Source: Dendrobates tinctorius (taxonomy: Eukaryota). Taken from it: DNA of 64,000 nt. Below are positions 40,801-64,000 of the stretch, piece after piece. Below the pieces are notes generated by a model. It saw nothing but the letters and a program-made list of their open reading frames with translations. It ran no database searches and was not told the origin of the DNA. The DNA is taken from NCBI RefSeq assembly GCF_039654945.1, contig NW_027361774.1:620001-684000 (forward strand), given 5' to 3'. A program made the position numbers and the translations under genes. Positions within the stretch are counted from its first letter, which is position 1. Each line of letters begins with the position of its first letter.

Positions 40801-42001
40801 GGAAGGAAAAATTACGAGAGGTAAAGAGGTCGTGAATCACATGGAGTTTATTGCAGATGGAGCTGGCATTCCAGAGTGATCCAAAGAGTGGGAGCAGGGT
40901 GGTGGGTGTCAAGGGCATGGATTTGAGGTGGGAAAGATTTCTGGTGTTTGTGTTGATTTGGGAACGATAGAAGGGGGTAATAATGGGAGGTATGGGCTGT
41001 GGGGGTCCAGGGTTGAGAGATATATCGCCAGCAGTGAGGAGAAGCAGAGAGAGGGAGAGCATGTGGGAGAAGGAGGGTGGGTGGCTTGTTTTGTATTTTA
41101 TTAGGAGAGCTCTGAGGTCAAGGAGCAGGTCAGCAGAGGAGGTCAGGTGGGGAGGCCAGAGGGAAGAAGAGATTATTATTTGGTTAGCGGGTGATGGGGT
41201 TTGCGGATAGCGAAGGAGAGTGAGGAGTAGTGGAGCCAAAACTGTTAGTGAGTATGTCAGCATGGTGAGAGTAATATAAAAGGCAAAAGAAATTTAGTAC
41301 ATCTTAATGCAGCAGTTAGTCATACCTTCTGGTCACTTCAGGCTCATTTCAGATGTTATCCTTAGAAAACATCCTTGCAATGACAGACCGAGGTCAGACA
41401 GACCTCTTAGTCTGAATTTATACTAACTTAACAGCACATGAAAGGGCCCAGGTGTGATCAGAAAGGGAGGAGCAGCAGGGAGACTGGATGCAGACACAGG
41501 AGACGATTAATTAAAGTCACAAGAGGAAATGCAAAGGGAGATAGTATTGCAGCCAGAACACATACCAGTGATAGCAGACAGATACAGGGGTGATTGGGGT
41601 TCAGGAAAGCTGGGTGATGATGGTATTGCAGCCTGAACACATACCAGTGATAGCAGACAGATACAGGGGTGATTGGGGTTCAGGAAAGATGGATGATGAT
41701 GGTATTGCAGCCGGGATACATACCATTGATAGCAGACAGATACAGGGGTGATGATGGTATTGCAGCCGGGATACATACCATTGATAGCAGACAGATACAG
41801 GGGTGATTGTGGTTCAGGAAAGATGGGTGATGATGGTATTGCAGCCAGAACACATACCTGTGGATGAAGCAGATCAATTGTCAGAGTGATAGTAATAGTG
41901 AAGCATAGTAATAATAATAATGAAGCATCTAGAGCAAGGGAGTCATTTTCAGGCATATTTCAGATGTTATCCTTAGAACGACATCCTTGGAATGACAGAC
42001 C
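37853..42001 (-). mobile_element. L2-clade LINE, near full length, in intron 2 of gene A
   Basis: APE domain (LTETWL, MGDFN, TLDL, SDH); RT (YRPISLL, QSGFR, LDLSSAF, GVPQGSVLGP, YADD) with frameshifts; 3' tail TTTATAAATAAATAGTAATAAT; GACATTAT at both junctions. Confidence 0.93.
41545..41860. repeat. 79-bp tandem repeat in the L2 5' region
   Basis: ATAGCAGACAGATACAGGGGTGA units at 41571, 41650, 41729 and 41784. Confidence 0.85.
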
Positions 42002-42895
42002 GACATTATACAGTAACACTATGAAGAGATCGGGGGGGATTGACGGTATCATTGTGTGTGTCAGGTTCCTATAAGGTGTCACGATGTCGCTGTCTATTTC
42101 TCCATGGAGGAGTGGGAGTATATAGAAGGACACAGAGATCTATACAAGGACGTCATAATGGAGGTTCCCCAGCCCCTCACATCTCCAGGTAATAGACAGG
42201 ACTAAATACTCACCGCATATAATATATGTAGAGAATGAATTCAGTCCCTGCATGTGTTTCCTCCAGATCTATCCAGTAAGAGGACAACACCAGAGAGATG
42301 TCCCCGTCCTCTTCTTCCACAGGACTGTAACCAAGAAGATCCCAGTGTTCCTCAGGATCATCAGGTAGATGGAGAGAAGGTGTCAGGAGATCTCCCCTAT
42401 GATGTGTAGACGGCTGTGAAGGTCTTGTGCTCAGTCTTGTTTTATCCACCAGTATTATATGTTTTATACTTGTGTGATGAGAACGGTAGAGATGGCAGGA
42501 TTAGAGCTGACACCAGTGACCGGAGGTAAACTTTTTACCTCCAATCACAGCTGAGCGGTTATGCTGTGTTCTGACAACGTGGGAACCACGGCTCTGTGAC
42601 CGGCGGGGATGATTTTACCGCCAATCAGAAGCGCTACACCGGTGTTTACCGCACCTTCACACAGCTTGGGAAACACCGGCTTTTGTGCTGTGCATGATCG
42701 GCTATATTCTGCTATTAAATCAGCAAAAGTGTTGTGCCTGCCATCTGATGTATATACTTCTCATCAAGTTCTTGTTAAGTGAAGGAAAGTCTATTTTTTA
42801 ACTTTGGTCTCCCTCATTCATCTCCATACTATCTGGTCTGGGCCTACAACGACAGCATGCAATCTCCGGAGTCGGGAGATATGACTCTGCTATAA

Positions 42896-42971
<76 letters not shown>

Positions 42972-42978
42972 TACTATA

Positions 42979-44353
42979 CTAGATGGTGGCCCGATTCTAA
43001 CGCATCGGGTATTCTAGAATATGTATGTAGTTTATTTATGAAGATTTAAGAATAATGCAATGAATGTTCGGGCGGTGTAGAAAATTGCTTTGGAAAGGCT
43101 TCTGGAATCGACTTTGGGATTGCCCCTTGCAGACCTGGGGGGCTGGACCCTCATCTGACCTTGTTTTCCCTGGGCACACCGCTGGTGAAGTTTCCCTCTC
43201 TGCCTGCTGCACGCGCCATCTTCTTCCTTTGTGGTGACGTCACCGCTACCCGATGTTCGGCCGGTGTGGAGATTTCCTTCTGAACAGTATCTGCGTCCTG
43301 CCTTATGCTTGCCCTTTGCCGAACGGGGTTTTTTCGCCCTCCTCTGCTCAAGTTAAGGCAGGGCACATCGTTGGTGAAGTTCCTGTGGAGGACTGCTGCG
43401 GCGCCATCTTCCTCCACCTTCAGTGACGTCCCCGGGCGCGACCAATCAGCGACGCGGGATTTCCGTTACAGACAGAATTAGACGAATATATATATATACT
43501 AGATGGTGGCCCAATTCTAACGCATCGGGTATTCTAGAATATGGCCAAATTCGCATGCGTTTTGCCGCAGAAAACATGCTTTTTTCACGCGCGGAATTCA
43601 AGCGCATACCAAACGATTTGAAGCATCACTTGGAATGTGATTGACAGGTTGGTCACACTTGTGAAGCATAGTGTTTTTGACAATTGTGATCAACTTTTTA
43701 CTATTGATTGAAACCACAATTTTTTGCAAGTATTTAAATAGGCACTTCAACACATGAATCCACACTTGCGGGTAAAAAAGAATATTACTCCTTCTTATCC
43801 AAAATGAAGCGAACCACAATTATATTACCAACATGTAACTTTATTAAACAAAATAAAGACATTTAAAATTGGCTACATATTCATTGTTTCCTGATAACCT
43901 ACCCCAAAAGGGGAAAAAAAAACAGCAGACAATTATCTCTGTTTTGTTTAATAAAGTTACATGTTTTTAATATAATTGTGGTTCGCTTCATTTTGGATAA
44001 GAAGGAGTAATATTCTTTTTTGTCCGCAAGTGTGTATTTTTACTATTGATGATGCCTATGCAGCATCAATAGTAAAAGATAGCATGTAAAAGAGAATAAA
44101 AAAAAATTAAAAAAAGGTTATTCTCACCTTCCGACGGTCCCCGGACTCTTTCTTTCCTCTCCACGCTCCCGGCATCTTCCGTTCCCAGTTATGCTTAGCG
44201 CGAATTACCGGAGATGACGTCACTCTCGAGAGCGCGATGCTTGCGAGATTGCGACGTCATCAGCGGTCTTTCTTTTAAACTTTTGCTACAAATAAACTAC
44301 GGACTTTCAATATGGATCGGTGAGTGCTTCAGTCCTTACTTTCTTTGATGGTG

Positions 44354-44400
<47 letters not shown>
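42979..44400 (-). mobile_element. Two tandem non-autonomous Helitron-like elements in (TA)n (repeated near 53107 and 63678)
   Basis: Minus-strand 3' ends: hairpin CCCGATGCGTTAGAATCGGG about 7 nt before CTAG|T, at 42979 and 43499. Confidence 0.6.
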
Positions 44401-44403
<3 letters not shown>

Positions 44404-44616
44404 TATATTCTGTATATATGTGTGTATGTGTATATATATATGTTTGGCAGAGTCATATCTCCCGACTCTGCAGATTGCTGCTGTCATTGTATTATTACAC
44501 AGGATTCTTATGATGTTACATCGGATCATCTTCTTCTCATTCAGGTCTCTACAATATCGGATCCTCTCAGTGAAGATCTTCTACAGAAGAGAATTTTCCT
44601 GATTTACCCATCAAGG

Positions 44617-47600
44617 ATGGATATGGACAGAGACAAGATGGCGGAGAGGATGTTACACCTCACCCTAGAGATCCTCTTCCGTCTCACTGGAGAGGTGAGA
44701 GACTCTGATGACGTCACATTACATCATTCTTATCTATGGGAATAACAGATGGACAGAACTGGAAAGGTGAGGACTCTGGAAATGTCTGTAGTGAGATTTA
44801 TTAATGTGTCTCTCCATAACCAGGATTACACAGTGGTGAAGAAGACCTCTAGTGATCACTGTCAGGACCCTGTGTCTGAGGGATGTGGAAGACCCCTGAA
44901 CTCAATCACGGGGCCTCCACCTCACCCCCTGATCCATGAGGACATCAATGACCAGAAGATCCTAGAACTCATCTACAAGATGATTGAGCTGCTGACTGGA
45001 GAGGTGACACTGCTGGGAATGCTGGGACATTATACAGTAACACTATGAAGGGATCGGGGGGATGACGGTATCATTGTATGTGTCAGGTTCCTATAAGGTG
45101 TCAGGATGTCGCTGTCTATTTCTCCATGGAGGAGTGGGAGTATTTAGAAGGACACAGAGATCTGTACAAGGACGTCATAATGGAGGTTCCCCAGCCCCTC
45201 ACATCACCAGGTAATAGACAGGACTAAATACACACGGCCTATAATTATCTGTATGTAGAGAATTAATTCAGTCCCTGTATGTGTTTCCTCCAGATCTATC
45301 CAGTAAGAGGACAACACCAGAGAGATGTCCCCGTCCTCTTCTTCCACAGGACTGTAACCAAGAAGATCCCAGTGCTCCTCAGGATCATCAGGTAGATGGA
45401 GAGAAGGTGTCAGGAGATCTCCCCTATGATGTGTAGACGGCTGTGAAGGTCTTGTGCTCAGTCTTGTTTTTTCCCCCAGTATTATATGTTTTATACTTGT
45501 GTAATGAGAACGGTGGAGATGGCAGGATTAGAGCTGATCATAGATGGGACTTCTCCATCTGTCGGTGACTTTTACAATATTTGTTTCAGGGTGAAGGTCT
45601 GACCCATCTTAATACTACAGAGACATATGTGAGAGATGATGAGTGGTGTAAAGAGAAGATTCCCACATATGACTACCCAGGTGAGTAGTAACCACTGAAT
45701 GCAGAGAAGTCACAGATTCCTCTCAGTCACCGGCTGTGGCTGCTTTATCGGTGGTGTAGTCCGGCCGTATTACCATGATCACCATTTTGCCTCTAGACCA
45801 CAACATTCTCCTCCACCCAAAACTGTTCAAATGACTTTGGGCATTGAAAGCCCTTTTCTATAGAACTTACAACCTGGAGGATCCACCTACTCCCTGGTAT
45901 TAGTGTGAGGGTGATCCCTTAAAGAGAGATCTATATGATTACTTGTACCTAACCCAATATAGGCCGAGTGCGCGCTTAAAGAGTCACACCGAACACAGAG
46001 TTAGATGTCTACTCCTTTCTCAGCAAAGGCTTGCACACAACTGAAGTTTATTCTCAAGACAAAGAGACAGGAAATGGGTGTCACACCATCTTCTGAGTAG
46101 CCAGTGTCAGTCTATGATAGGTCCATTTCAGCTTCACTTCCATATATGGTATCCAGTATCTCAGCTTCTGCATTCCAAGGATTCCTTCCAAGGTGTTGTC
46201 TGAAGACACAGACGCCATCTTGGTACACCATATCTGAACTGACTTATATAAGGTTAGCTGCGTTGTACAGTACCATGAAAGTGAATGTAAATTGAAAAAC
46301 GCTGTGCACATGCTGCAGAAAAATCTGCGTGGAAACGCTGCGGGTTCATGTCAATTCTTTGTGCGGATCTGCAGCGTTTCTGCACCCATTGACTTGCATT
46401 AAGTCGGGCATATCCGGAGCAAAACCGCAGATCTAAAAAAGATCTGCGTTTTTGCTGTGGATGAAACGCTGCAGATCGGGAGGGGGGGGAAGAGTGGGGG
46501 CGGCGTGTCGGCGGAGACTGTCTGCTTGTGTATGTGTGTGGGCGGTGACTGTGTGCGTGTATGGGCCTGTGTGTGCGGGGGTCATCAGGCGGTCTGCCGG
46601 GCTGTGCGAAGGTCATTAGGCATATGTCAGGGCTGTGCGGGGGTCATTAGGCATATGTCGGGGCTGTGCGGGGGTCATCGGGCGGTCTGCTGGGCTGTGC
46701 GGGGGTCATTAGGCATATGCCGGGGCTGTGCGGGGGTCATCGGTCGGTCTGCCGGGCTGTGCGGGGGTCATTAGGCATATGTCGGGGCTGTGCGGGGGTC
46801 ATTGGGCGGTCTGCGGGTCTGTGCGGGGGTCATTAGGCACATGCCGGGGCTGTGCGGGGGTCATTAGGCATATGTCGGGGCTGTGCGGGGGTCATCGGGC
46901 GGTCTGCTGGGCTGTGCGTGGGTCATTAGGTATACGCCGTGGCTGTGTGGGGGTCATTGCGCGGTCTGCCGGGCTGTGCGGGGGTCATTAGGCATATGTC
47001 GGGGCTGTGCGGGGGTCATTGGGCGGTCTGCCGGGCTGTGCAGGGGTCATTAGGCATATGCCGGGGCTGTGCGGGGGTCATTGGGCGGTCTGTCGGGCTG
47101 TGCGGGGGTCATTGGGCGGTCTGCGGGGCTGTGCGGGGGTCATTAGGCATATGCCGGGCTGTGCGGGGGTCATTAGGCATATGTCGGGGCTGTGCGGGGG
47201 TCATTGGGCGGTCTGCTGGGCTGTGCAGGGGTCATTAGGCATATGCCGGGGCTGTGCGGGGGTCATTGGGCGGTCTGCCGGGCTGTGCGGGGGTCATCAG
47301 GCGGTCTGCTGGGCTGTGCGGGGGTCATTAGGCATATGCCGGGGCTGTGCGGGGGTCATTAGGCATATGCCGGGCTGTGCGGGGGTCATTAGGCATATGC
47401 CGGGGCTGTGCGGGGGTCATCGGGCGGTCTGCTGGGCTGTGCGTGGGTCATTAGGCATACGCCGTGGCTGTGCGGGGGTCATTGGGCGGTTTGCCGGGCT
47501 GTGCGGGGGTCATTAGGCATATGTCGGGGCTGTGCGGGGGTCATTGGGCGGTCTGCGGGGCTGTGTGTACTACAAGTCCCATCGGGCTATGCCTGCTACA

Positions 47601-50600
47601 CTGTCAGTGCTTATACACTTAGATAGGAAGGAAGGATCATCCCCGCGCTGCCGCAAGAAGAATTCCAGAAATTGTAGAGGTGTTAACGTGGTTTCTTCTA
47701 CGTGTTTGGGGGGTTCAGGTGACCCCTTCATCAGGACATACCACAAATATTGTACCAAATCATTCTCAAACACTATCCGAAGCCAGGAAACATCTAGAAA
47801 AGATTAAATTACAAATTAATCTAATTTAAAGATAAAACCACTGCTGCCCCGAAGACACTGAGAGGTAATAATAAATCTGGGACCAAAGGAGCCAACTCTA
47901 ATTCGGATCTGTCCAGTTCTCTCCCTCTTTCACTTCTTGAGTTCTCCATTCATGATACCACTCCAAGCATGTTGGTACCTTCACTAACCACTATCTCATT
48001 AGGTCCTGACGACCCTGATACCTCCACTCCACCAGCCCCACCAATGACACTATTGTAGTGGATCATTCAGATGCCTCTAAATCCGGGACGGTTCCTCTTT
48101 TACCCCGGGCAATAAAAAAACTCCCAACTGAACCAATTTTTTGTACCCAAAACCGTAAAAATAAAAAGCACTACAGAGGAACTAGGGGAGGGAGAAAAAG
48201 AGGAAAAATACCACCTTAACCCCTCCATCGCTAATGAATTAACTTCTAATATTTGTAATCTTTCTGACTACAAACTCTCTGAAAGTGAGGAATCCCTCCT
48301 ATCTAGAGGATTGTCCTTCTGTCTCTCCAACAAACCTAAGGATTTTAATTTATTTTTAGATTTACAAATTTTCATAAGGAAATTAAACCTTAAAAGACAT
48401 TTCTTTATTAAGGAAAATAAATCCAACCCTCCAACCAACACAGAAAATACTGAAGAAACAGATGAATGGTTTCACCTGAACGTACCTGCTAAGTCTAAAT
48501 TTTATCCTGTTGAGGACAAAAGCCACCATCTATCTATTATCTATCTATCTATCCTTCTATCTATCTCTCTATCTATCCTTCTATCTATCTATCTATTATC
48601 TATCTATCCTATAGCTATCTATCTATTTCTCTATTTATTTATCCTTCTATCTATTTATCCTTCTATCTATTATCTATGTATCTGTGTGTTATGGAGTGTG
48701 GGTTGGACAAATGTAAATGAGGAGGTTGGACAGAAATGACATCACAAATCTTTTTTTTTTGTTAAATAAGATATCTTTATTTAGCTTACAAAAACGCATA
48801 CAAATCCGCCTGAAAAACCGCAGCAAAAAGGCATCAAAGACGCAACTGAGTTTTCTCCCAAGAACTGTGGATTTTGTGCGGAAAAATCCGCGGCAAAATC
48901 TGCAACGTGTGCACGCAGCCTAAATGTTGTTTGCGCACACTGCAAGACTCAGAAGTGAGAGCGGATTTTGCTGGATTGGTTTATGGAAACCTTGTTGCTT
49001 TTCAGCAGCCTTTGAGCCACTAATAGTGCGGGAACCTCTGTTTTTCCATTGACACATGATGGACCTGAGTGAGGACTTGTTTTTTGTGAGATGAGAATTG
49101 GTGTTATTTTCGCCTACATAACATTGATTGGTTTCTTTATATTTGATACTAGATGTGTGCCCGATGCTATCGCATCGGGAGGGCAGTAACATCACGATGG
49201 GGGCAGCTTTGTGGTGCTGGGGGTGGCGGCCCACCCACTTCCATGCAGTCACAACTGGCAGGAAAGACTTTGTTTTGCGATCTGTGCTGGAGATGGTGTG
49301 CGGCGCTTCCAGAGGGTGGCCGCACCCAATCTCCAGCACAGGCCTCAAGTCGCAGTCTTTCCTGGTGACTGTGACTGCATGGAGGTGGGTGGGGAGGCAG
49401 CGGTGGGATCCGGCGCATGTAGTCAGACAGTGGGTCCTGGCGGGGGTCTGGCGGTGGCATCCCTCTCATTACTCCCCCCTCATTACACCCTCTCATTATA
49501 CCCCCTTTATTACACCCCTCTCTTTATACCCCCTCGTTACACCCCTTTAACAGCCTCATGATCGCAGTGATGGCCGGGATCCGAGCGGTGGCCGGGATCC
49601 GAGTAGCGGTCGGGATCCCAGCGCCGGTAGGGATCACAGTGGCAGCCTGGATATAAGCGGCAGCTGGGATCCCAGGGGTATTCGGGATCGCAGCTGCGTC
49701 CTGGATCTGAGCGGCATCACTTGGGTGTACCAAAATAGCGGTCGGCGTACTTCCGGTGCGGCGCAGTGGATTGTGGGATTCGGGGACATCCAGATGGAAG
49801 TGGATGACAGACAATTTAAGGCAATTATATATATACATTTGGGAGGCAGAATGAACAAACAGTTGAACACCGCACACTACTGGCTCATCCAACAAGGTTT
49901 TCAATTAGACTGTGAACTGTCATTGTCTTGGTAAATAAAGTTTTTTACATAGCTTGCCATTTTTTAAGTAGAAGTGTTGAAAAATATAAACCTCAAGGAT
50001 ATTTTATTTAAAAAAATTGTTTATTATGTTAGATGACTGTACCAGGAGATCAGAGGGACAGCTGACATCTTCAATTTTTAAATCTGATGATCTTGATATC
50101 CTACAAGATACACCTGAAATGAATGCCGTTACTCCAGACACATCATCATCCATTCACAGCAAAGATCTGTCATCTGAACCTATGAAACATGTCCCATCTT
50201 CTGATTCTTTACTGACTACTAAGGAAAATCAAAGTCACAAAAGAGGCATTAAAAAACAAACTGCTCCTAAAGCAAAGAAGTCATTTTCATGTTCAGAATG
50301 TGGTAAATATTTTACACGGAAATCAGATTTTGTTACTCACCAGAGAATTCACACAGGGGAGAAGCCTTTTTCATGTTCAGAATGTGGGAAATGTTTTAAT
50401 CATAAAGGGAATCTTAATGAACACCATAGAACTCACACAGGGGAGAAGCCTGTTTCATGTTCAGAATGTGGGAAATGTTTTATCAATAAATCAGTTTGTG
50501 TTAAGCACCAGAGAATCCACACAGGAGAGAAGCCTTTTTCATGTTTAGAATGTGGGAAATGTTTTGCACATAAATCACATTTTGTTACCCACCAAAGAAC

Positions 50601-51639
50601 TCACACAGGGGAGAAGCCTTTTTCCTGTTCTGAATGTGGGAAATGTTTTGCACATAAATCACATTTTGTTACCCACCAAAGAACTCACACAGGGGAGAAG
50701 CCTTTTTCCTGTTCAGAATGTGGGAAATGTTTTAACACTAAATCAGAATGTGTTACGCACCAGAGAACTCACACAGGAGAGAAGCCTTTTTCATGTTTAG
50801 AATGTGGGAAATGTTTTAACACTAAATCAGATTGTGTTATGCACCAGAGAACTCACACAGGAGAGAAGCCTTTTTCATGTTCAGAATGTGGGAAATGTTT
50901 TATCAATAAATCAGTTTGTGTTAAGCACCAGAGAACTCACACAGGGGAGAAGCCTTTTTCATGTTCAGAATGTGGGAAATGTTTTAACCTTAAAAGGAAT
51001 CTTGATGAACACCATAGAACTCACACAGGGATGAAGCCTGTTTCATGTTCAGAATGTGGGAAATGTTTTAGCAGTAAATCAGCCTGTGCTAAGCACCATA
51101 GAATCCACACAGGAGAGAAGCCTGTTTCATGTTCAGAATGTGGGAAATGTTTTATCAGTAAATCAGCTTGTGCTAAGCACCATAGAATCCACACAGGAGA
51201 GAAGCCTTTTTCATGTTCAGAATGTGGGAAATGTTTTAAATTTAAAAAGAATCTTGATGAACACCATAAAACTCACACAGGGGAGAAGCCTGTTTCATGT
51301 TCAGAATGTGGGAAATGTTTTATCAGTAAATCAGCTTGTGTTAAGCACCAGAGAACTCACACAGGAGAGAAGCCTTTTTCATGTTTAGAATGTGGGAAAT
51401 GTTTTAACAGTAAATCAGATTGTGTTAAACACCAGAGAACTCACACAGGAGAGAAGCCTTTTTCATGTTTAGAATGTGGGAAATGTTTTAACCAGAAAGG
51501 GAGTCTTGATGAACACCATAGAACTCATACAGGGGAGAAGCCTTTTTCATGTTCAGAATGTGGGAAATGTTTTACAAGGAAATCAAATTGTGTTAAGCAC
51601 CAGAGAACCCACATACAGGAGAAGCCTTTTTCCTGTTAA
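44617..51639 (+). CDS. KRAB-type C2H2 zinc-finger protein B (XlCOF/XlCGF-like), 6 coding exons, ~725 aa, 16 fingers
   Basis: Exons 44617-44694, 44824-45003, 45087-45210, 45294-45391, 45590-45680 and 50033-51639; all GT-AG and phase-consistent (2178 nt); TGEKP linkers. Confidence 0.92.
46270..48920. mobile_element. Harbinger-like non-autonomous element containing a 31-bp array (46575-47560), a nested Penelope fragment and (TATC)n; duplicated at +10533
   Basis: Right end CGTGTGCACGCAGCC+TAA; left end indistinct. Confidence 0.55.
47620..48525 (+). mobile_element. Penelope-like element fragment (copy at ~58153-59058)
   Basis: [22 protein letters not shown]...[11 protein letters not shown], typical of the PLE ORF N-terminus; inverted hammerhead-like motif upstream. 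Confidence 0.75.
49149..49836 (-). mobile_element. Non-autonomous Helitron-like element (copy at ~59682-60369)
   Basis: CCCGATGCGATAGCATCGGG hairpin before CTAG on the minus strand; internal inverted repeats and ~18-bp GGGATCC repeats. Confidence 0.55.
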
Positions 51640-51830
51640 TGTGGGAAATTTTTTAACCAGGAAGCGCTTCTTGATCGCCATCAGAGCAGTCACACAGAGG
51701 AGAAGCCATTTTCATTTTCTTAATGTAGGAAATATTTTACTTGGAAATCAACTGTTAATAAACATCAGAGATGTCACATAGGGGAGAAGCCTTTTTTTAT
51801 ATTCATAATGTTGGAATAGTTTTAACCAAA
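51640..51830 (+). pseudogene. Two to three decayed zinc fingers in the 3' UTR of gene B (also after gene C)
   Basis: TGTGGGAAA...CATCAGAG..CACA..GGAGAAGCC pattern continues with stops and frameshifts. Confidence 0.8.
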
Positions 51831-52528: not shown

Positions 52529-53061
52529 GTAGATGGAGAGAAGGTGTCAGGAGATCTCCCCTATGATGTGTAGACGGCTGTGAAGGTCTTGTGCTCAGTC
52601 TTGTTTTATCCACCAGTATTATATGTTTTATACTTGTGTGATGAGAACGGTAGAGATGGCAGGATTAGAGCTGACACCAGTGACCGGAGGTAAACTTTTT
52701 ACCTCCAATCACAGCTGAGCGGTTATGCTGTGTTCTGACAACGTGGGAACCACGGCTCTGTGACCGGCGGGGATGATTTTACCGCCAATCAGAAGCGCTA
52801 CACCGGTGTTTACCGTACCTTCACACAGCTTGGGAAACACCGGCTTTTGTGCTGTGCATGATCGGCTATATTCTGCTATTAAATCAGCAAAAGTGTTGTG
52901 CCTGCCATCTGATGTATATACTTCTCATCAAGTTCTTGTTAAGTGAAGGAAAGTCTATTTTTTAACTTTGGTCTCCCTCATTCATCTCCATACTATCTGG
53001 TCTGGGCCTACAACGACAGCATGCAATCTCCGGAGTCGGGAGATATGACTCTGCTATAATG

Positions 53062-53099
<38 letters not shown>

Positions 53100-55149
53100 T
53101 ACTATACTAGATGGTGGCCCGATTCTAACGCATCGTGTATTCTAGAATATGTATGTAGTTTATTTATGAAGATTTAAGAATAATGCAATGAATGTTCGGG
53201 CGGTGTAGAAAATTGCTTTGGAAAGGCTTCTGGAATCGACTTTGGGATTGCCCCTTGCAGACCTGGGGGGCTGGACCCTCATCTGACCTTGTTTTCCCTG
53301 GGCACACCGCTGGTGAAGTTTCCCTCTCTGCCTGCTGCACGCGCCATCTTCTTCCTTTGTGGTGACGTCACCGCTACCCGATGTTCGGCCGGTGTGGAGA
53401 TTTCCTTCTGAACAGTATCTGCGTCCTGCCTTATGCTTGCCCTTTGCCGAACGGGGTTTTTTCGCCCTCCTCTGCTCAAGTTAAGGCAGGGCACATCGTT
53501 GGTGAAGTTCCTGTGGAGGACTGCTGCGGCGCCATCTTCCTCCACCTTCAGTGACGTCCCCGGGCGCGACCAATCAGCGACGCGGGATTTCCGTTACAGA
53601 CAGAATTAGACGAATATATATATATAATAGATGGTGGCCCAATTCTAACGCATCGGGTATTCTAGAATATGGCCAAATTCGCATGCGTTTTGCCGCAGAA
53701 AACATGCTTTTTTCACGCGCGGAATTCAAGCGCATACCAAACGATTTGAAGCATCACTTGGAATGTGATTGACAGGTTGGTCACACTTGTGAAGCATAGT
53801 GTTTGACAATTGTGATCAACTTTTTACTATTGATTGAAACCACAATTTTTTGCAAGTATTTAAATAGGCACTTCAACACATGAATCCACACTTGCGGGTA
53901 AAAAAGAATATTACTCCTTCTTATCCAAAATGAAGCGAACCACAATTATATTACCAACATGTAACTTTATTAAACAAAATAAAGACATTTAAAATTGGCT
54001 ACATATTCATTGTTTCCTGATAACCTACCCCAAAAGGGGAAAAAAAAACAGCAGACAATTATCTCTGTTTTGTTTAATAAAGTTACATGTTTTTAATATA
54101 ATTGTGGTTCGCTTCATTTTGGATAAGAAGGAGTAATATTCTTTTTTGTCCGCAAGTGTGGATTTTTACTATTGATGATGCCTATGCAGCATCAATAGTA
54201 AAAGATAGCATGTAAAAAAGAATAAAAAAAAATTAAAAAAAGGTTATTCTCACCTTCCGACGGTCCCCGGACTCTTTCTTTCCTCTCCACGCTCCCGGCA
54301 TCTTCCGTTCCCAGTTATGCTTAGCGCGAATTACCGGAGATGACGTCACTCTCGAGAGCGCGATGCTTGCGAGATTGCGACGTCATCAGCGGTCTTTCTC
54401 GCAAAGCATTACTGGGAACGGAAGATGCCGGCTGCGTGGTTAGAGGTGGGAGAGCTCCGGGGGCCGTCGGAGGGTGAGTATATCACTATTTTTTGCTTTA
54501 ATTCTATTTTTACAGGTTTATGGTACCCACGGTCCAGAGGAGTCTCCCGACTCCTAGCGCCGCTGATCTCCCGACGGTAGCGGTGGCGTGTGTCCTTCAA
54601 ATTCCGGACTGCGCCTGCGCACTGCGCCTGTCGCTGATTGGTTGCGGCCTGCCGGCCACGACCAATCAGCGACACGGGATTTCCGTTACAGACAGACAGA
54701 GTTAGACGATTATATAAATAGATATATATATATATATATGTTATATATAGCTGACCCGTGGAAGCGCTGATAGGCCGTCATCAGAGTTTACTCACTCCTT
54801 TCTTCAGCCTCCCGGCCATGAAGTTTTAAACTTTTGCTACAAATAAACTACGGACTTTCAATATGGATCGGTGAGTGCTTCAGTCCTTACTTTCTTTGAT
54901 GGTGAAATTATATATATATATATATATATATATAGATATATTCTGTATATATGTGTGTATGTGTATATATATATGTTTGGCAGAGTCATATCTCCCGACT
55001 CTGCAGATTGCTGCTGTCATTGTATTATTACACAGGATTCTTATGATGTTACATCGGATCATCTTCTTCTCATTCAGGTCTCTACAATATCGGATCCTCT
55101 CAGTGAAGATCTTCTACAGAAGAGAATTTTCCTGATTTACCCATCAAGG

Positions 55150-58100
55150 ATGGATATGGACAGAGACAAGATGGCGGAGAGGATGTTACACCTCACCCTA
55201 GAGATCCTCTTCCGTCTCACTGGAGAGGTGAGAGATTCTGATGACGTCACATTACATCATTCTTATCTATGGGAATAACAGATGGACAGAACTGGAAAGG
55301 TGAGGACTCTGGAAATGTCTGTAGTGAGATTTATTAATGTGTCTCTCCATAACCAGGATTACACAGTGGTGAAGAAGACCTCTAGTGATCACTGTCAGGA
55401 CCCTGTGTCTGAGGGATGTGGAAGACCCCTGAACTCAATCACGGGGCCTCCACCTCACCCCCTGATCCATGAGGACATCAATGACCAGAAGATCCTAGAA
55501 CTCATCTACAAGATGATTGAGCTGCTGACTGGAGAGGTGACACTGCTGGGAATGCTGGGACATTATACAGTAACACTATGAAGGGATCGGGGGGATGACG
55601 GTATCATTGTATGTGTCAGGTTCCTATAAGGTGTCAGGATGTCGCTGTCTATTTCTCCATGGAGGAGTGGGAGTATTTAGAAGGACACAGAGATCTGTAC
55701 AAGGACGTCATAATGGAGGTTCCCCAGCCCCTCACATCACCAGGTAATAGACAGGACTAAATACACACGGCCTATAATTATCTGTATGTAGAGAATTAAT
55801 TCAGTCCCTGTATGTGTTTCCTCCAGATCTATCCAGTAAGAGGACAACACCAGAGAGATGTCCCCGTCCTCTTCTTCCACAGGACTGTAAACAAGAAGAT
55901 CCCAGTGCTCCTCAGGATCATCAGGTAGATGGAGAGAAGGTGTCAGGAGATCTCCCCTATGATGTGTAGACGGCTGTGAAGGTCTTGTGCTCAGTCTTGT
56001 TTTTTCCCCCAGTATTATATGTTTTATACTTGTGTAATGAGAACGGTGGAGATGGCAGGATTAGAGCTGATCATAGATGGGACTTCTCCATCTGTCGGTG
56101 ACTTTTACAATATTTGTTTCAGGGTGAAGGTCTGACCCATCTTAATACTACAGAGACATATGTGAGAGATGATGAGTGGTGTAAAGAGAAGATTCCCACA
56201 TATGACTACCCAGGTGAGTAGTAACCACTGAATGCAGAGAAGTCACAGATTCCTCTCAGTCACCGGCTGTGGCTGCTTTATCGGTGGTGTAGTCCGGCCG
56301 TATTACCATGATCACCATTTTGCCTCTAGACCACAACATTCTCCTCCACCCAAAACTGTTCAAATGACTTTGGACATTGAAAGCCCTTTTCTATAGAACT
56401 TACAACCTGGAGGATCCACCTACTCCCTGGTATTAGTGTGAGGGTGATCCCTTAAAGAGAGATCTATATGATTACTTGTACCTAACCCAATATAGGCCGA
56501 GTGCGCGCTTAAAGAGTCACACCGAACACAGAGTTAGATGTCTACTCCTTTCTCAGCAAAGGCTTGCACACAACTGAAGTTTATTCTCAAGACAAAGAGA
56601 CAGGAAATGGGTGTCACACCATCTTCTGAGTAGCCAGTGTCAGTCTATGATAGGTCCATTTCAGCTTCACTTCCATATATGGTATCCAGTATCTCAGCTT
56701 CTGCATTCCAAGGATTCCTTCCAAGGTGTTGTCTGAAGACACAGACGCCATCTTGGTACACCATATCTGAACTGACTTATATAAGGTTAGCTGCGTTGTA
56801 CAGTACCATGAAAGTGAATGTAAATTGAAAAACGCTGTGCACATGCTGCAGAAAAATCTGCGTGGAAACGCTGCGGGTTCATGTCAATTCTTTGTGCGGA
56901 TCTGCAGCGTTTCTGCACCCATTGACTTGCATTAAGTCGGGCATATCCGGAGCAAAACCGCAGATCTAAAAAATATCTGCGTTTTTGCTGTGGATGAAAC
57001 GCTGCAGATCGGGAGGGGGGGGAAGAGTGGGGGCGGCGTGTCGGCGGAGACTGTCTGCTTGTGTATGTGTGTGGGCGGTGACTGTGTGCGTGTATGGGCC
57101 TGTGTGTGCGGGGGTCATCAGGCGGTCTGCCGGGCTGTGCGAAGGTCATTAGGCATATGTCAGGGCTGTGCGGGGGTCATTAGGCATATGTCGGGGCTGT
57201 GCGGGGGTCATCGGGCGGTCTGCTGGGCTGTGCGGGGGTCATTAGGCATATGCCGGGGCTGTGCGGGGGTCATCGGTCGGTCTGCCGGGCTGTGCGGGGG
57301 TCATTAGGCATATGTCGGGGCTGTGCGGGGGTCATTGGGCGGTCTGCGGGTCTGTGCGGGGGTCATTAGGCACATGCCGGGGCTGTGCGGGGGTCATTAG
57401 GCATATGTCGGGGCTGTGCGGGGGTCATCGGGCGGTCTGCTGGGCTGTGCGTGGGTCATTAGGTATACGCCGTGGCTGTGTGGGGGTCATTGCGCGGTCT
57501 GCCGGGCTGTGCGGGGGTCATTAGGCATATGTCGGGGCTGTGCGGGGGTCATTGGGCGGTCTGCCGGGCTGTGCAGGGGTCATTAGGCATATGCCGGGGC
57601 TGTGCGGGGGTCATTGGGCGGTCTGTCGGGCTGTGCGGGGGTCATTGGGCGGTCTGCGGGGCTGTGCGGGGGTCATTAGGCATATGCCGGGCTGTGCGGG
57701 GGTCATTAGGCATATGTCGGGGCTGTGCGGGGGTCATTGGGCGGTCTGCTGGGCTGTGCAGGGGTCATTAGGCATATGCCGGGGCTGTGCGGGGGTCATT
57801 GGGCGGTCTGCCGGGCTGTGCGGGGGTCATCAGGCGGTCTGCTGGGCTGTGCGGGGGTCATTAGGCATATGCCGGGGCTGTGCGGGGGTCATTAGGCATA
57901 TGCCAGGCTGTGCGGGGGTCATTAGGCATATGCCGGGGCTGTGCGGGGGTCATCGGGCGGTCTGCTGGGCTGTGCGTGGGTCATTAGGCATACGCCGTGG
58001 CTGTGCGGGGGTCATTGGGCGGTTTGCCGGGCTGTGCGGGGGTCATTAGGCATATGTCGGGGCTGTGCGGGGGTCATTGGGCGGTCTGCGGGGCTGTGTG

Positions 58101-61100
58101 TACTACAAGTCCCATCGGGCTATGCCTGCTACACTGTCAGTGTTTATACACTTAGATAGGAAGGAAGGATCATCCCCGCGCTGCCGCAAGAAGAATTCCA
58201 GAAATTGTAGAGGTGTTAACGTGGTTTCTTCTACGTGTTTGGGGGGTTCAGGTGACCCCTTCATCAGGACATACCACAAATATTGTACCAAATCATTCTC
58301 AAACACTATCCGAAGCCAGGAAACATCTAGAAAAGATTAAATTACAAATTAATCTAATTTAAAGATAAAACCACTGCTGCCCCGAAGACACTGAGAGGTA
58401 ATAATAAATCTGGGACCAAAGGAGCCAACTCTAATTCGGATCTGTCCAGTTCTCTCCCTCTTTCACTTCTTGAGTTCTCCATTCATGATACCACTCCAAG
58501 CATGTTGGTACCTTCACTAACCACTATCTCATTAGGTCCTGACGACCCTGATACCTCCACTCCACCAGCCCCACCAATGACACTATTGTAGTGGATCATT
58601 CAGATGCCTCTAAATCCGGGACGGTTCCTCTTTTACCCCGGGCAATAAAAAAACTCCCAACTGAACCAATTTTTTGTACCCAAAACCGTAAAAATAAAAA
58701 GCACTACAGAGGAACTAGGGGAGGGAGAAAAAGAGGAAAAATACCACCTTAACCCCTCCATCGCTAATGAATTAACTTCTAATATTTGTAATCTTTCTGA
58801 CTACAAACTCTCTGAAAGTGAGGAATCCCTCCTATCTAGAGGATTGTCCTTCTGTCTCTCCAACAAACCTAAGGATTTTAATTTATTTTTAGATTTACAA
58901 ATTTTCATAAGGAAATTAAACCTTAAAAGACATTTCTTTATTAAGGAAAATAAATCCAACCCTCCAACCAACACAGAAAATACTGAAGAAACAGATGAAT
59001 GGTTTCACCTGAACGTACCTGCTAAGTCTAAATTTTATCCTGTTGAGGACAAAAGCCACCATCTATCTATTATCTATCTATCTATCCTTCTATCTATCTC
59101 TCTATCTATCCTTCTATCTATCTATCTATTATCTATCTATCCTATAGCTATCTATCTATTTCTCTATTTATTTATCCTTCTATCTATTTATCCTTCTATC
59201 TATTATCTATGTATCTGTGTGTTATGGAGTGTGGGTTGGACAAATGTAAATGAGGAGGTTGGACAGAAATGACATCACAAATCTTTTTTTTTTGTTAAAT
59301 AAGATATCTTTATTTAGCTTACAAAAACGCATACAAATCCGCCTGAAAAACCGCAGCAAAAAGGCATCAAAGACGCAACTGAGTTTTCTCCCAAGAACTG
59401 TGGATTTTGTGCGGAAAAATCCGCGGCAAAATCTGCAACGTGTGCACGCAGCCTAAATGTTGTTTGCGCACACTGCAAGACTCAGAAGTGAGAGCGGATT
59501 TTGCTGGATTGGTTTATGGAAACCTTGTTGCTTTTCAGCAGCCTTTGAGCCACTAATAGTGCGGGAACCTCTGTTTTTCCATTGACACATGATGGACCTG
59601 AGTGAGGACTTGTTTTTTGTGAGATGAGAATTGGTGTTATTTTCGCCTACATAACATTGATTGGTTTCTTTATATTTGATACTAGATGTGTGCCCGATGC
59701 TATCGCATCGGGAGGGCAGTAACATCACGATGGGGGCAGCTTTGTGGTGCTGGGGGTGGCGGCCCACCCACTTCCATGCAGTCACAACTGGCAGGAAAGA
59801 CTTTGTTTTGCGATCTGTGCTGGAGATGGTGTGCGGCGCTTCCAGAGGGTGGCCGCACCCAATCTCCAGCACAGGCCTCAAGTCGCAGTCTTTCCTGGTG
59901 ACTGTGACTGCATGGAGGTGGGTGGGGAGGCAGCGGTGGGATCCGGCGCATGTAGTCAGACAGTGGGTCCTGGCGGGGGTCTGGCGGTGGCATCCCTCTC
60001 ATTACTCCCCCCTCATTACACCCTCTCATTATACCCCCTTTATTACACCCCTCTCTTTATACCCCCTCGTTACACCCCTTTAACAGCCTCATGATCGCAG
60101 TGATGGCCGGGATCCGAGCGGTGGCCGGGATCCGAGTAGCGGTCGGGATCCCAGCGCCGGTAGGGATCACAGTGGCAGCCTGGATATAAGCGGCAGCTGG
60201 GATCCCAGGGGTATTCGGGATCGCAGCTCCGTCCTGGATCTGAGCGGCATCACTTGGGTGTACCAAAATAGCGGTCGGCGTACTTCCGGTGCGGCGCAGT
60301 GGATTGTGGGATTCGGGGACATCCAGATGGAAGTGGATGACAGACAATTTAAGGCAATTATATATATACATTTGGGAGGCAGAATGAACAAACAGTTGAA
60401 CACCGCACACTACTGGCTCATCCAACAAGGTTTTCAATTAGACTGTGAACTGTCATTGTCTTGGTAAATAAAGTTTTTTACATAGCTTGCCATTTTTTAA
60501 GTAGAAGTGTTGAAAAATATAAACCTCAAGGATATTTTATTTAAAAAAATTGTTTATTATGTTAGATGACTGTACCAGGAGATCAGAGGGACAGCTGACA
60601 TCTTCAATTTTTAAATCTGATGATCTTGATATCCTACAAGATACACCTGAAATGAATGCCGTTACTCCAGACACATCATCATCCATTCACAGCAAAGATC
60701 TGTCATCTGAACCTATGAAACATGTCCCATCTTCTGATTCTTTACTGACTACTAAGGAAAATCAAAGTCACAAAAGAGGCATTAAAAAACAAACTGCTCC
60801 TAAAGCAAAGAAGTCATTTTCATGTTCAGAATGTGGTAAATATTTTACACGGAAATCAGATTTTGTTACTCACCAGAGAATTCACACAGGGGAGAAGCCT
60901 TTTTCATGTTCAGAATGTGGGAAATGTTTTAATCATAAAGGGAATCTTAATGAACACCATAGAACTCACACAGGGGAGAAGCCTGTTTCATGTTCAGAAT
61001 GTGGGAAATGTTTTATCAATAAATCAGTTTGTGTTAAGCACCAGAGAATCCACACAGGAGAGAAGCCTTTTTCATGTTTAGAATGTGGGAAATGTTTTGC

Positions 61101-62172
61101 ACATAAATCACATTTTGTTACCCACCAAAGAACTCACACAGGGGAGAAGCCTTTTTCCTGTTCTGAATGTGGGAAATGTTTTGCACATAAATCACATTTT
61201 GTTACCCACCAAAGAACTCACACAGGGGAGAAGCCTTTTTCCTGTTCAGAATGTGGGAAATGTTTTAACACTAAATCAGAATGTGTTACGCACCAGAGAA
61301 CTCACACAGGAGAGAAGCCTTTTTCATGTTTAGAATGTGGGAAATGTTTTAACACTAAATCAGATTGTGTTATGCACCAGAGAACTCACACAGGAGAGAA
61401 GCCTTTTTCATGTTCAGAATGTGGGAAATGTTTTATCAATAAATCAGTTTGTGTTAAGCACCAGAGAACTCACACAGGGGAGAAGCCTTTTTCATGTTCA
61501 GAATGTGGGAAATGTTTTAACCTTAAAAGGAATCTTGATGAACACCATAGAACTCACACAGGGATGAAGCCTGTTTCATGTTCAGAATGTGGGAAATGTT
61601 TTAGCAGTAAATCAGCCTGTGCTAAGCACCATAGAATCCACACAGGAGAGAAGCCTGTTTCATGTTCAGAATGTGGGAAATGTTTTATCAGTAAATCAGC
61701 TTGTGCTAAGCACCATAGAATCCACACAGGAGAGAAGCCTTTTTCATGTTCAGAATGTGGGAAATGTTTTAAATTTAAAAGGAATCTTGATGAACACCAT
61801 AAAACTCACACAGGGGAGAAGCCTGTTTCATGTTCAGAATGTGGGAAATGTTTTATCAGTAAATCAGCTTGTGTTAAGCACCAGAGAACTCACACAGGAG
61901 AGAAGCCTTTTTCATGTTTAGAATGTGGGAAATGTTTTAACAGTAAATCAGATTGTGTTAAACACCAGAGAACTCACACAGGAGAGAAGCCTTTTTCATG
62001 TTTAGAATGTGGGAAATGTTTTAACCAGAAAGGGAGTCTTGATGAACACCATAGAACTCATACAGGGGAGAAGCCTTTTTCATGTTCAGAATGTGGGAAA
62101 TGTTTTACAAGGAAATCAAATTGTGTTAAGCACCAGAGAACCCACATACAGGAGAAGCCTTTTTCCTGTTAA
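55150..62172 (+). CDS. KRAB-type C2H2 zinc-finger protein C, near-identical duplicate of B
   Basis: Exons 55150-55227, 55357-55536, 55620-55743, 55827-55924, 56123-56213 and 60566-62172. Confidence 0.92.
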
Positions 62173-62761
62173 TGTGGGAAATTTTTTAACCAGGAAGCGC
62201 TTCTTGATCGCCATCAGAGCAGTCACACAGAGGAGAAGCCATTTTCATTTTCTTAATGTAGGAAATATTTTACTTGGAAATCAACTGTTAATAAACATCA
62301 GAGATGTCACATAGGGGAGAAGCCTTTTTTTATATTCATAATGTTGGAATAGTTTTAACCAAAATTAAATGTTCTTAAATGGGTTGTCTCTTGTCATTCC
62401 TCATGTTTGCTGACAAAAGGATAAAACTAAACTTTATTAATTCCAAATATAAAGCTATACCCATAATTCACCCCAGACAGATAGCAGACAGATACAGGGG
62501 TGATTGTGGTTCAGGAAAGATGGGTGATGATGGTATTGCAGCCAGAACACATACCTGTGGATGAAGCAGATCAATTGTCAGAGTGATAGTAATAGTGAAG
62601 CATAGTAATAATAATAATGAAGCATCTAGAGCAAGGGAGTCATTTTCAGGCATATTTCAGATGTTATCCTTAGAACGACATCCTTGGAATGACAGACCGA
62701 CATTATACAGTAACACTATGAAGAGATCGGGGGGGATTGACGGTATCATTGTGTGTGTCAG

Positions 62762-63061
62762 GTTCCTATAAGGTGTCACGATGTCGCTGTCTATTTCTCC
62801 ATGGAGGAGTGGGAGTATATAGAAGGACACAGAGATCTATACAAAGACGTCATAATGGAGGTTCCCCAGCCCCTCACATCTCCAGGTAATAGACAGGACT
62901 AAATACTCACCGCATATAATATATGTAGAGAATGAATTCAGTCCCTGCATGTGTTTCCTCCAGATCTATCCAGTAAGAGGACAACACCAGAGAGATGTCC
63001 CCGTCCTCTTCTTCCACAGGACTGTAACCAAGAAGATCCCAGTGTTCCTCAGGATCATCAG
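62762..63061 (+). pseudogene. Orphan KRAB exon and exon 4 (copy 3)
   Basis: 62762-62885 and 62964-63061. Confidence 0.85.
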
Positions 63062-63592
63062 GTAGATGGAGAGAAGGTGTCAGGAGATCTCCCCTATGAT
63101 GTGTAGACGGCTGTGAAGGTCTTGTGCTCAGTCTTGTTTTATCCACCAGTATTATATGTTTTATACTTGTGTGATGAGAACGGTAGAGATGGCAGGATTA
63201 GAGCTGACACCAGTGACCGGAGGTAAACTTTTTACCTCCAATCACAGCTGAGCGGTTATGCTGTGTTCTGACAACGTGGGAACCACGGCTCTGTGACCGG
63301 CGGGGATGATTTTACCGCCAATCAGAAGCGCTACACCGGTGTTTACCGCACCTTCACACAGCTTGGGAAACACCGGCTTTTGTGCTGTGCATGATCGGCT
63401 ATATTCTGCTATTAAATCAGCAAAAGTGTTGTGCCTGCCATCTGATGTATATACTTCTCATCAAGTTCTTGTTAAGTGAAGGAAAGTCTATTTTTTAACT
63501 TTGGTCTCCCTCATTCATCTCCATACTATCTGGTCTGGGCCTACAACGACAGCATGCAATCTCCGGAGTCGGGAGATATGACTCTGCTATAA

Positions 63593-63670
<78 letters not shown>

Positions 63671-64000
63671 TACTATACTAGATGGTGGCCCGATTCTAAC
63701 GCATCGGGTATTCTAGAATATGTATGTAGTTTATTTATGAAGATTTAAGAATAATGCAATGAATGTTCGGGCGGTGTAGAAAATTGCTTTGGAAAGGCTT
63801 CTGGAATCGACTTTGGGATTGCCCCTTGCAGACCTGGGGGGCTGGACCCTCATCTGACCTTGTTTTCCCTGGGCACACCGCTGGTGAAGTTTCCCTCTCT
63901 GCCTGCTGCACGCGCCATCTTCTTCCTTTGTGGTGACGTCACCGCTACCCGATGTTCGGCCGGTGTGGAGATTTCCTTCTGAACAGTATCTGCGTCCTGC

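What the first reader, a model, noticed from the sequence alone, without database searches (positions are those of the whole stretch)
41783..64000. ZNF gene birth in progress: triplication of an apparently promoterless, phase-compatible cassette
Seen: at least three near-identical units. The breakpoint joins gene B's 3' flank to the L2 5' repeat via CAGACAGATA microhomology. Each complete unit has orphan KRAB exons plus a full coding gene but not the candidate promoter motif. Exon phases allow cross-unit splicing (exon 2 to orphan exon 3, exon 4 to the next exon 1, exon 5 to the next finger exon). Inference: one upstream promoter could serve alternative terminal finger arrays and variable KRAB number, a combinatorial ZNF locus. 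This is the best candidate for a novel system here, but it is untested.
Basis: partly seen in the sequence, partly recalled or inferred. Interest (0 to 1): 0.75.

Follow-up and report, generated by a model that had tools for sequence, protein, structure and literature searches.

The report
Recent tandem copies of frog KRAB-ZNF gene
A poison-frog KRAB zinc-finger gene has very recently been copied head-to-tail at least three times, which is the ordinary way this gene family grows; the copies are not clearly promoterless, and no cross-copy splicing system was shown.

Summary
The repeat is real in this assembly. There are two complete units (41783-51946, 10,164 bp; 51947-62479, 10,533 bp) and the first 1,521 bp of a third. 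They are about 99.9% identical at aligned bases, and both junctions are identical.

Each unit holds 219 bp of an antisense LINE 5' end, two "orphan" exons, and a complete six-coding-exon KRAB-ZNF gene with 16 Pfam-scored fingers. The locus matches Dendrobates tinctorius.

The orphan exons are exons 3-4 of upstream module A. A LINE insertion with an 8-bp target-site duplication cut them off from A's exons 1-2.

- **"Promoterless":** the family's usual first exon is indeed absent from the unit. But unit 2 carries a CpG island and a leader exon just upstream of exon 1. This stretch is 94.6% identical to the annotated 5' end of a paralog, and one RNA-like contig splices the leader to exon 1.
- **Microhomology:** paralog flanks indicate a 5-nt filler at the junction, not 10-nt microhomology.

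The exon phases are as stated, but identical copies share phases automatically. The copies differ by two amino acids, so there is no combinatorial diversity yet. The exon 4 to exon 1 join is already annotated at sister loci. Copy-specific expression and read-level copy number could not be tested.

Verdict: an ordinary young tandem duplication. An earlier scan note (s1-377038) reached a like verdict elsewhere in this genome.

The parts
32015..32163 (+). The family's usual first exon (begins MAG.SLTEEK, ends ..WSAALQ, then a GT donor). It is the presumed first exon and promoter side of module A. It occurs once in the window and lies outside the repeat unit.
   Evidence: the translation matches the N-termini of annotated dendrobatid proteins P0027, P0100 and P0012. 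No second copy was found in the window.
37364..37822 (+). Module A exons 1 and 2 (37364-37513 and 37643-37822). They are 96.7-96.9% identical to gene B exons 1-2.
   Evidence: 37302-37852 matches 44483-45033 and 55016-55566; motif positions, offset 7181.
37853..42001 (-). Antisense non-LTR retrotransposon with endonuclease and reverse-transcriptase domains; its reading frame is broken into pieces. It sits in module A's intron 2, flanked by an 8-bp target-site duplication (GACATTAT). Its 5' end carries 55-134 bp tandem repeats.
   Evidence: PF03372, PF00078; three ORF pieces; duplicated 8-mer at both ends against the uninterrupted intron 2 of gene B; repeats at 41540-41858.
41783..51946 (+). 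Repeat unit 1 (10,164 bp). Relative to unit 2 it has a 425-bp deletion at 44272/44273 that removes most of the CpG island.
51947..62479 (+). Repeat unit 2 (10,533 bp), with the CpG island intact. It is collinear over its first 10,073 bp (51947-62019) with the single unit seen in the other D. tinctorius assembly, whose contig ends there.
62480..64000 (+). Start of repeat unit 3, cut by the window end. In this stretch it is closer to unit 1 than to unit 2, and it has one private change at 62845 in the orphan KRAB exon.
42065..42364 (+). 'Orphan' exons, which are module A exon 3 (KRAB box, 42065-42188) and exon 4 (42267-42364). Splice sites are intact. Copies lie at 52229-52528 and 62762-63061.
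   Evidence: sequence and splice sites; KRAB, 36.5 bits; 95.5% identical to gene B exons 3-4; the annotated model P0017 uses them after A exon 2.
54211..54870 (+). Promoter-like CpG island containing a roughly 300-bp palindrome with two TGACGTCA motifs and inverted CCAAT boxes, followed by a leader exon ending at 54870 with a GTGAGT donor. The unit 1 remnant is 44085-44319.
   Evidence: CpG observed/expected 1.0-1.2; 94.6% identical to L002 5777-6635; the P0016 coding sequence begins inside that stretch; X5 contig joins 54870 to exon 1; non-CpG divergence of 1.3% to the paralog against 3.4-7% for neighbouring stretches.
44545..51639 (+). Gene B in unit 1. Exon 1: acceptor 44545, ATG 44617, end 44694. 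Exon 2: 44824-45003. Exon 3 (KRAB): 45087-45210. Exon 4: 45294-45391. Exon 5: 45590-45680. Finger exon: 50033-51639 including the stop. Phases at exon ends are 0, 0, 1, 0, 1.
   Evidence: sequence and splice sites; ORF, KRAB, 16 fingers; same exon layout in annotated paralogs P0016 and P0002.
55078..62172 (+). Gene B in unit 2 (all exons at +10,533). It differs from copy 1 by N to K in exon 4 (55891) and K to R at helix position +2 of one finger (61781).
51942..51946 (+). Duplication junction. The gene's 3' flank ends at 51941, 5 nt of filler (AGACA) follow, and LINE 5'-repeat sequence resumes at 51947. An identical junction lies at 62475-62479.
   Evidence: paralog flanks in L002 and L003; X1 loose end after 51941.

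Best explanation
This is a young tandem segmental duplication inside a KRAB zinc-finger (KZFP) gene cluster of a dendrobatid poison frog. The sequence matches Dendrobates tinctorius.

The ancestral locus had the two-module layout common in this frog family: first exon, module A exons 1-4, module B exons 1-5, then one finger exon. An antisense LINE had inserted into A's intron 2.

A non-homologous join linked the 3' flank of the finger exon to the LINE's 5' repeat, with a 5-nt filler. This duplicated about 10.5 kb holding A exons 3-4 plus all of module B and the fingers. Because the two junctions are identical, further copies most likely arose by unequal exchange between units.

Each unit therefore carries a complete one-module KZFP gene with its own ATG, stop codon, CpG island and leader exon. 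The 'orphan' KRAB exons came along as passengers.

Functionally this is extra gene dosage and raw material for divergence, which is how the family normally expands. Shown: anatomy, junction, exon structure, near-identity. Inferred: order of events, that the CpG island is an active promoter, and that the copies are expressed.
For: - Repeat structure and divergence: 13 substitutions in about 10.1 kb. Identical junctions.
- LINE target-site duplication, showing the orphan exons are A exons 3-4.
- KRAB and 16 fingers by Pfam. Exon and splice map.
- Same locus in GCA_039654945.1 at 99.3-99.65% identity. That contig ends inside the first unit's finger array, as expected for an unresolved repeat.
- CpG island and leader exon conserved with paralog L002, where the annotated coding sequence starts.
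- A leader-to-exon-1 joint and exon 1-2, 2-3 and 3-4 joints appear in RNA-like contigs.
- An older paralog carries the same order of LINE end, orphan exons and module B, so this arrangement has been duplicated before.
- Published work names tandem duplication as the main mode of C2H2-ZNF expansion (PMC2443715) and reports lineage-specific KRAB-ZNF expansion in frog (PMC3971581).
Against: - No read-level confirmation of the junction or the copy number. Runs were available only as short contigs, and no listed piece bridges 51946/51947.
- The transcription start was not mapped. The leader exon has a possible upstream acceptor near 54808, so it could be an internal exon.
- The CpG-rich palindrome belongs to a repeated element family with 67-77% identical copies elsewhere.
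- Relative to local divergence, CpG decay in the island is not lower than in the flanks.
- Unit 1 has lost most of the island.
- The annotated model at this locus (P0017) joins A exon 2, the orphan exons, B exon 5 and the fingers, rather than using B's own exons 1-4.
Confidence: 0.75

Rival explanations
1. Downstream units have no working promoter and are expressed only from the single upstream promoter near 32 kb, through read-through and cross-unit splicing. That would give proteins with varying numbers of KRAB modules and a choice of terminal finger exons, that is, a combinatorial locus.
For: - The family's usual first exon is present once, outside the unit.
- All cross-unit joins are phase-compatible, and exon 1 is open in frame from its acceptor.
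- Annotated dendrobatid proteins show exon 4 to exon 1 joins, finger-linker to exon 1 joins, and even finger exon to next finger exon joins, e.g. P0002 across 59 kb.
- The model at this locus (P0017) uses A exon 2 then the orphan exons.
- A spliced orphan-type exon 3 to exon 4 joint appears in three runs.
Against: - The unit has its own CpG island and leader exon, and a contig splices that leader to exon 1.
- Reaching the next unit requires skipping a terminal exon with candidate poly(A) signals.
- The copies differ by 2 amino acids, so the products would be nearly the same.
- The annotated joins are pipeline models in arrays of near-identical genes, where mis-joining is common.
- The short joints could not be assigned to this locus rather than to paralogs.
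Confidence: 0.12
2. Units 2 and 3 are real DNA copies but transcriptionally dead. They would be 5'-truncated duplicates of a two-module gene, on their way to becoming pseudogenes.
For: - They lack the usual first exon and A exons 1-2.
- No copy-specific expression could be shown.
- The CpG-rich element may simply be a transposon-derived repeat.
Against: - All exons, splice sites and the long ORF are intact in both complete copies.
- The paralog with the same upstream element is annotated as starting there.
- The duplication is so young that intact ORFs say little either way.
Confidence: 0.1
3. Assembly artefact: one unit, or two haplotypes of one unit, wrongly laid out in tandem.
For: - Unit 3 resembles unit 1 more than unit 2, which alternating haplotypes could produce.
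- The other assembly shows only one unit before its contig ends.
- The junction has no read-level confirmation.
Against: - There are no gaps (N) in the window.
- The junction is a new adjacency with a filler, present twice and identical. Haplotype stacking does not create that.
- The three units are mutually distinguishable.
- The other assembly breaks exactly inside the array.
Confidence: 0.06

Closest known systems
Tandem segmental duplication in KRAB-ZNF clusters (mammalian chr19-type clusters; general model in PMC2443715)
   Same: Head-to-tail copying of a whole KRAB-ZNF gene within a cluster. The new copies are nearly identical, and the first differences include a DNA-contact position of a finger.
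   Different: This is in a frog lineage. The unit boundary lies inside a LINE within the neighbouring module's intron, so each copy also carries two exons of the upstream module. The copies are far younger than most described paralogs.
Two-module (double-KRAB) dendrobatid KZFP genes as annotated in Ranitomeya, Dendrobates and Phyllobates
   Same: The A-plus-B layout here matches them.
   Different: Here module A is split by a LINE, and only its second half is repeated with module B. No transcript from this locus was seen.
Conjoined genes / transcription-induced chimeras between tandem neighbours
   Same: Read-through from one tandem gene into the next, using phase-compatible exons. Annotated examples exist in this family (P0002, P0007).
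   Different: Such chimeras are usually minor by-products, and none was demonstrated here.
Variable-exon loci (clustered protocadherins, UGT1A)
   Same: Tandem repeated exon units that could be joined to shared exons.
   Different: In those loci each variable exon has its own promoter and a distinct sequence, and splices to shared downstream constant exons. Here the units are whole genes, nearly identical, each with its own terminal exon. The comparison rests on general knowledge and was not tested.

Membership tests
KRAB C2H2 zinc-finger gene (KZFP) | N-terminal KRAB A box | tested here: met
   PF01352 at 40.6 bits (cut-off 20.4) for 45087-45209, and 36.5 bits for the orphan exon 42065-42187.
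KRAB C2H2 zinc-finger gene (KZFP) | Tandem C2H2 finger array encoded in one 3' exon | tested here: met
   16 zf-C2H2 matches in 50035-51636 and an 84-bp periodicity.
KRAB C2H2 zinc-finger gene (KZFP) | KRAB recruits the TRIM28/KAP1 corepressor | not testable with these tools
   This is a biochemical property; frog KRAB boxes may differ from mammalian ones.
Recent tandem segmental duplication (copy-number gain) | Head-to-tail units sharing one breakpoint junction | tested here: met
   The junctions at 51946/51947 and 62479/62480 are identical.
Recent tandem segmental duplication (copy-number gain) | Near-identity of units, yet units distinguishable | tested here: met
   13 substitutions and 5 indels between units 1 and 2; unit 3 has a private change.
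Recent tandem segmental duplication (copy-number gain) | Junction and copy number seen in independent reads | tested here: inconclusive
   Only short contigs were served and no listed piece bridges the junction. The other assembly's contig ends inside the array.
Non-LTR retrotransposon (LINE) | Endonuclease and reverse-transcriptase ORF, with a target-site duplication | tested here: met
   PF03372 and PF00078; 8-bp duplication GACATTAT.
Non-LTR retrotransposon (LINE) | Assignment to the L2 clade | not tested
Combinatorial variable-exon locus (protocadherin/UGT1A-like) | Alternative units encode different products | tested here: not met
   The complete copies differ by 2 amino acids in total.
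Combinatorial variable-exon locus (protocadherin/UGT1A-like) | Transcripts from one promoter splice across units | tested here: inconclusive
   No copy-specific joint was recovered. Short contigs map to paralogs as well. A search with exon 1 among short proteins found nothing.

The most novel reading that the evidence does not exclude
The downstream, 5'-truncated units are used through long-range splicing from the single upstream promoter. The array would then work as one gene that varies its number of KRAB modules and picks among diverging finger exons. That would be a frog-specific way to diversify KZFPs, already hinted at by the many multi-module and finger-linker-to-exon-1 models annotated in dendrobatids.
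Probability: 0.1. Interest if true: 0.6.

Novelty: new member of a known kind. Interest (0 to 1): 0.27.

Why it matters
It gives a clean, very young example of how a KRAB zinc-finger cluster grows. The breakpoint, the 5-nt filler, the passenger exons from a neighbouring module and the first amino-acid differences (one at a DNA-contact position) are all still readable.

It also shows that 'orphan' KRAB exons in these frog clusters can be explained by a LINE insertion followed by partial duplication. They need not be a designed splice cassette. Beyond that, it is an ordinary family expansion.

Tried and rejected
- **Repeat finder on the whole window.** It was swamped by a 34-bp minisatellite, so I used scripted BLAST instead.
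- **Public reads.** All 24 runs are held only as short contigs. Depth is dominated by the hundreds of paralogs, so copy number, start sites and copy-specific expression could not be read. The single read-laying run covered 51500-57100.
- **Exon 1 (50 aa) searched among short proteins for transcript fragments showing what precedes it.** No hits.
- **CpG-decay comparison with the paralog, as a test for an unmethylated promoter.** The island is the least diverged non-coding block, but relative to local divergence its CpG loss is not lower. The result is ambiguous.
- **Earlier scan notes searched for a neighbouring window showing how far the array continues.** Nothing was found.
- **Joined spliced protein model of gene B.** Exons were searched one by one by reference.
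Rejected after comparison with the paralog 3' flanks.
- **P0017 as evidence for real A-to-B splicing.** Rejected as too weak. It is a partial pipeline model that begins in transposon-derived exons.
Full report
**The observation**

- 41783-44273 matches 51947-54399.
- 44273-53429 matches 54824-64000.
- 41783-43301 matches 62480-64000.

So unit 1 is 41783-51946 (10,164 bp) and unit 2 is 51947-62479 (10,533 bp). Unit 3 begins at 62480 and is cut by the window end. The window contains no N.

A full alignment of units 1 and 2 gives 13 substitutions and 5 indels. The largest indel is a 425-bp stretch that is present in unit 2 (54400-54824) and missing from unit 1.

Over its 1.5 kb, unit 3 agrees with unit 1 rather than unit 2. 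It has one private change at 62845. The sequences around 51947 and 62480 are identical.

**Organism and a second assembly**

The pre-finger linker of the finger exon finds only dendrobatid frog proteins. One of them, P0017 from Dendrobates tinctorius, is 100% identical over that linker.

The P0017 locus (L001, GCA_039654945.1, contig JAYMGB010000446.1) is the same locus at 99.3-99.65% identity. That contig ends inside the first unit's finger array, at window-equivalent 51486. This is what an unresolved tandem repeat would produce, so it neither confirms nor refutes the copy number. The single unit in that assembly carries the 425-bp stretch, so unit 1's deletion is derived.

**Anatomy of a unit**

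I read gene B directly from the sequence.

| Exon | Coordinates (unit 1) | Length | Phase at end |
|---|---|---|---|
| 1 | acceptor 44545, ATG 44617, end 44694 | 150 nt from the acceptor, open in frame | 0 |
| 2 | 44824-45003 | 180 nt | 0 |
| 3 (KRAB) | 45087-45210 | 124 nt | 1 |
| 4 | 45294-45391 | 98 nt | 0 |
| 5 | 45590-45680 | 91 nt | 1 |
| Finger exon | 50033-51639, including the stop | about 1.6 kb | – |

- Pfam confirms KRAB (40.6 bits) and 16 C2H2 fingers.
- Annotated paralogs P0016 and P0002 have the same exon layout.
- Unit 2 repeats all of this at +10,533.
- The two complete copies differ by N/K in exon 4 and by K/R at helix position +2 of one finger.

I did not build or search a joined spliced protein. 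Exons were searched one at a time by reference.

**What the "orphan" KRAB exons are**

The orphan exons are 42065-42188 (KRAB, 36.5 bits) and 42267-42364. Both have intact splice sites. They are 95.5% identical to gene B exons 3-4.

Upstream, 37302-37852 is 96.7-96.9% identical to gene B exons 1-2. Between these two blocks lies an antisense LINE at 37853-42001. It has endonuclease and reverse-transcriptase domains, and its reading frame is broken into pieces.

The same 8-mer, GACATTAT, flanks the LINE on both sides, whereas gene B's intron 2 is uninterrupted. The orphan exons are therefore exons 3-4 of an upstream module A, cut off from A exons 1-2 by a LINE insertion.

The repeat unit starts 219 bp inside the LINE's 5' end. 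That is why every later unit carries A exons 3-4 without A exons 1-2.

An older paralog (L002) has the same order at about 95% identity: LINE end, orphan exons, module B. So this arrangement has been copied before.

**The junction**

The 3' flanks of two paralogs continue past "..CACCCC" with "CTGAAGG..". One contig of run X1 leaves the window sequence after 51941 with "CTGAAGATTA".

The ancestral flank therefore ends at 51941, and the LINE homology begins at 51947. The 5 nt between them (AGACA) are filler that repeats letters of the adjacent LINE repeat.

The join looks non-homologous, by end joining or template switching. Because the second junction is identical, the third copy most likely arose by unequal exchange. 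That last step is inference.

**Is the cassette promoterless?**

The family's usual first exon occurs once, at about 32015-32163, upstream of module A and outside the unit.

However, unit 2 has a CpG island at 54301-54800 with observed/expected 1.0-1.2. It contains:
- a roughly 300-bp palindrome with two TGACGTCA motifs;
- inverted CCAAT boxes;
- a short leader exon ending at 54870 with a GTGAGT donor, 207 bp before the exon 1 acceptor.

The whole 882-bp stretch is 94.6% identical to L002 5777-6635. The annotated coding sequence of paralog P0016 starts inside that stretch and splices to exon 1.

One contig of run X5 matches up to 54872 and then continues with the first letters of exon 1. That is a spliced leader-to-exon-1 joint.

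Against the paralog, this block has 1.3% non-CpG divergence, compared with 3.4-7% in neighbouring stretches.

There are caveats:
- The start site itself is unmapped.
- The leader exon has a possible upstream acceptor near 54808.
- The palindrome has diverged copies elsewhere.
- CpG loss relative to local divergence is not reduced.
- Unit 1 has lost most of the island.

I rate "each intact unit has its own promoter" as likely, at about 0.55. It is not shown.

**Cross-unit splicing**

They follow automatically from copying one gene.

The proposed joins are also not new for the family. Of the 120 annotated dendrobatid proteins retrieved, 36 carry more than one module or an internal exon 1. At least eight of them have the exon 4 to exon 1 join (..PQDHQ|VSTIS..). 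Others join the finger-exon linker to the next exon 1, or one finger exon to another 59 kb away (P0002).

An earlier scan note (s1-377038) reached the same view of two-module genes at another place in this genome.

At this locus the only model, P0017, joins A exon 2, the orphan exons, B exon 5 and the fingers. It starts in transposon-derived exons and is partial, so it carries little weight.

**Read evidence**

The read evidence is thin. All runs are held as short contigs and are dominated by paralogs.
- Exon 1-2, 2-3 and 3-4 joints are seen.
- An orphan-type exon 3 to exon 4 joint (78-nt intron) is seen in three runs.
- None of these joints can be tied to one unit, or even to this locus.
- Copy number from depth, start sites and copy-specific expression could not be tested.

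**Verdict**

This is a real, very young tandem duplication of a KRAB zinc-finger gene. The divergence of about 0.13% would mean well under a million years at typical vertebrate rates; that rate is my own rough figure, and gene conversion could also keep the copies alike.

This is the standard mode of growth for the family. Published work names tandem duplication as the main route of C2H2-ZNF expansion (PMC2443715) and reports lineage-specific KRAB-ZNF expansion in frog (PMC3971581).

With only two amino-acid differences between copies, there is no combinatorial repertoire yet.

Noticed in passing
window 11726-16053; 17219-20046; 22844-24675; 32208-33738: Four large minisatellite arrays with unit sizes of 39/78 bp, 34 bp (C-rich), 21 bp and 110 bp. 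The 110-bp array lies just after the usual first exon, so it sits in module A's first intron. Array lengths differ between the two D. tinctorius assemblies.
   Followed up: partly
window 46572-47565 and 57105-58098: A GC-rich 31-bp minisatellite (about 32 copies) inside intron 5 of each gene B copy. It also scores as CpG-rich.
   Followed up: no
window 952-1130 (- strand), 1150-1727 (- strand): Exon 1 of another family member on the opposite strand. Its upstream block is 90% identical to 35929-36539 upstream of module A, pointing to an inverted paralog pair.
   Followed up: partly
L001 796-5680 (- strand) vs window 36539-41409: A third, inverted copy of module A exons 1-2 plus the same LINE insertion, at 92.8% identity and contiguous across the exon-LINE boundary. 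The LINE insertion would then predate that duplication, yet A and B exons are only 3-4.5% apart. This suggests gene conversion between A and B.
   Followed up: no
window 45026-45537 vs L002 1900-2410: Gene B exons 3-4 are closer (97.9%) to the orphan exons of the L002 paralog than the two sets of orphan exons are to each other (94.8%). This is another hint of gene conversion among KRAB exon pairs.
   Followed up: no
L003 (P0002 locus) 6001-91711; L002 7766-46727: Annotated D. tinctorius models span 42-86 kb. P0002 joins one finger exon to a second finger exon 59 kb downstream, and P0016 has a 39-kb intron before its finger exon. Several dendrobatid models leave the finger-exon linker at '..KQ|V' and enter the next gene's exon 1.
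   Followed up: partly
window 54211-54514; 43432-43496 and 54652-54720: A CpG-rich palindromic (foldback) element, and a second short element (CCAAT box plus 'GGGATTTCCGTTACAGACAGACAG') present twice per unit. Diverged copies of the palindrome occur in the other loci; copies of the second element were seen only within the window. Both look transposon-derived, and the palindrome block sits at an annotated 5' end.
   Followed up: partly
window 32015-32163: The usual first exon here has a frame disruption after 'MAGLSLTEEK..' compared with the Ranitomeya proteins. The in-frame part resumes only before '..QPYMWSAALQ'.
   Followed up: no
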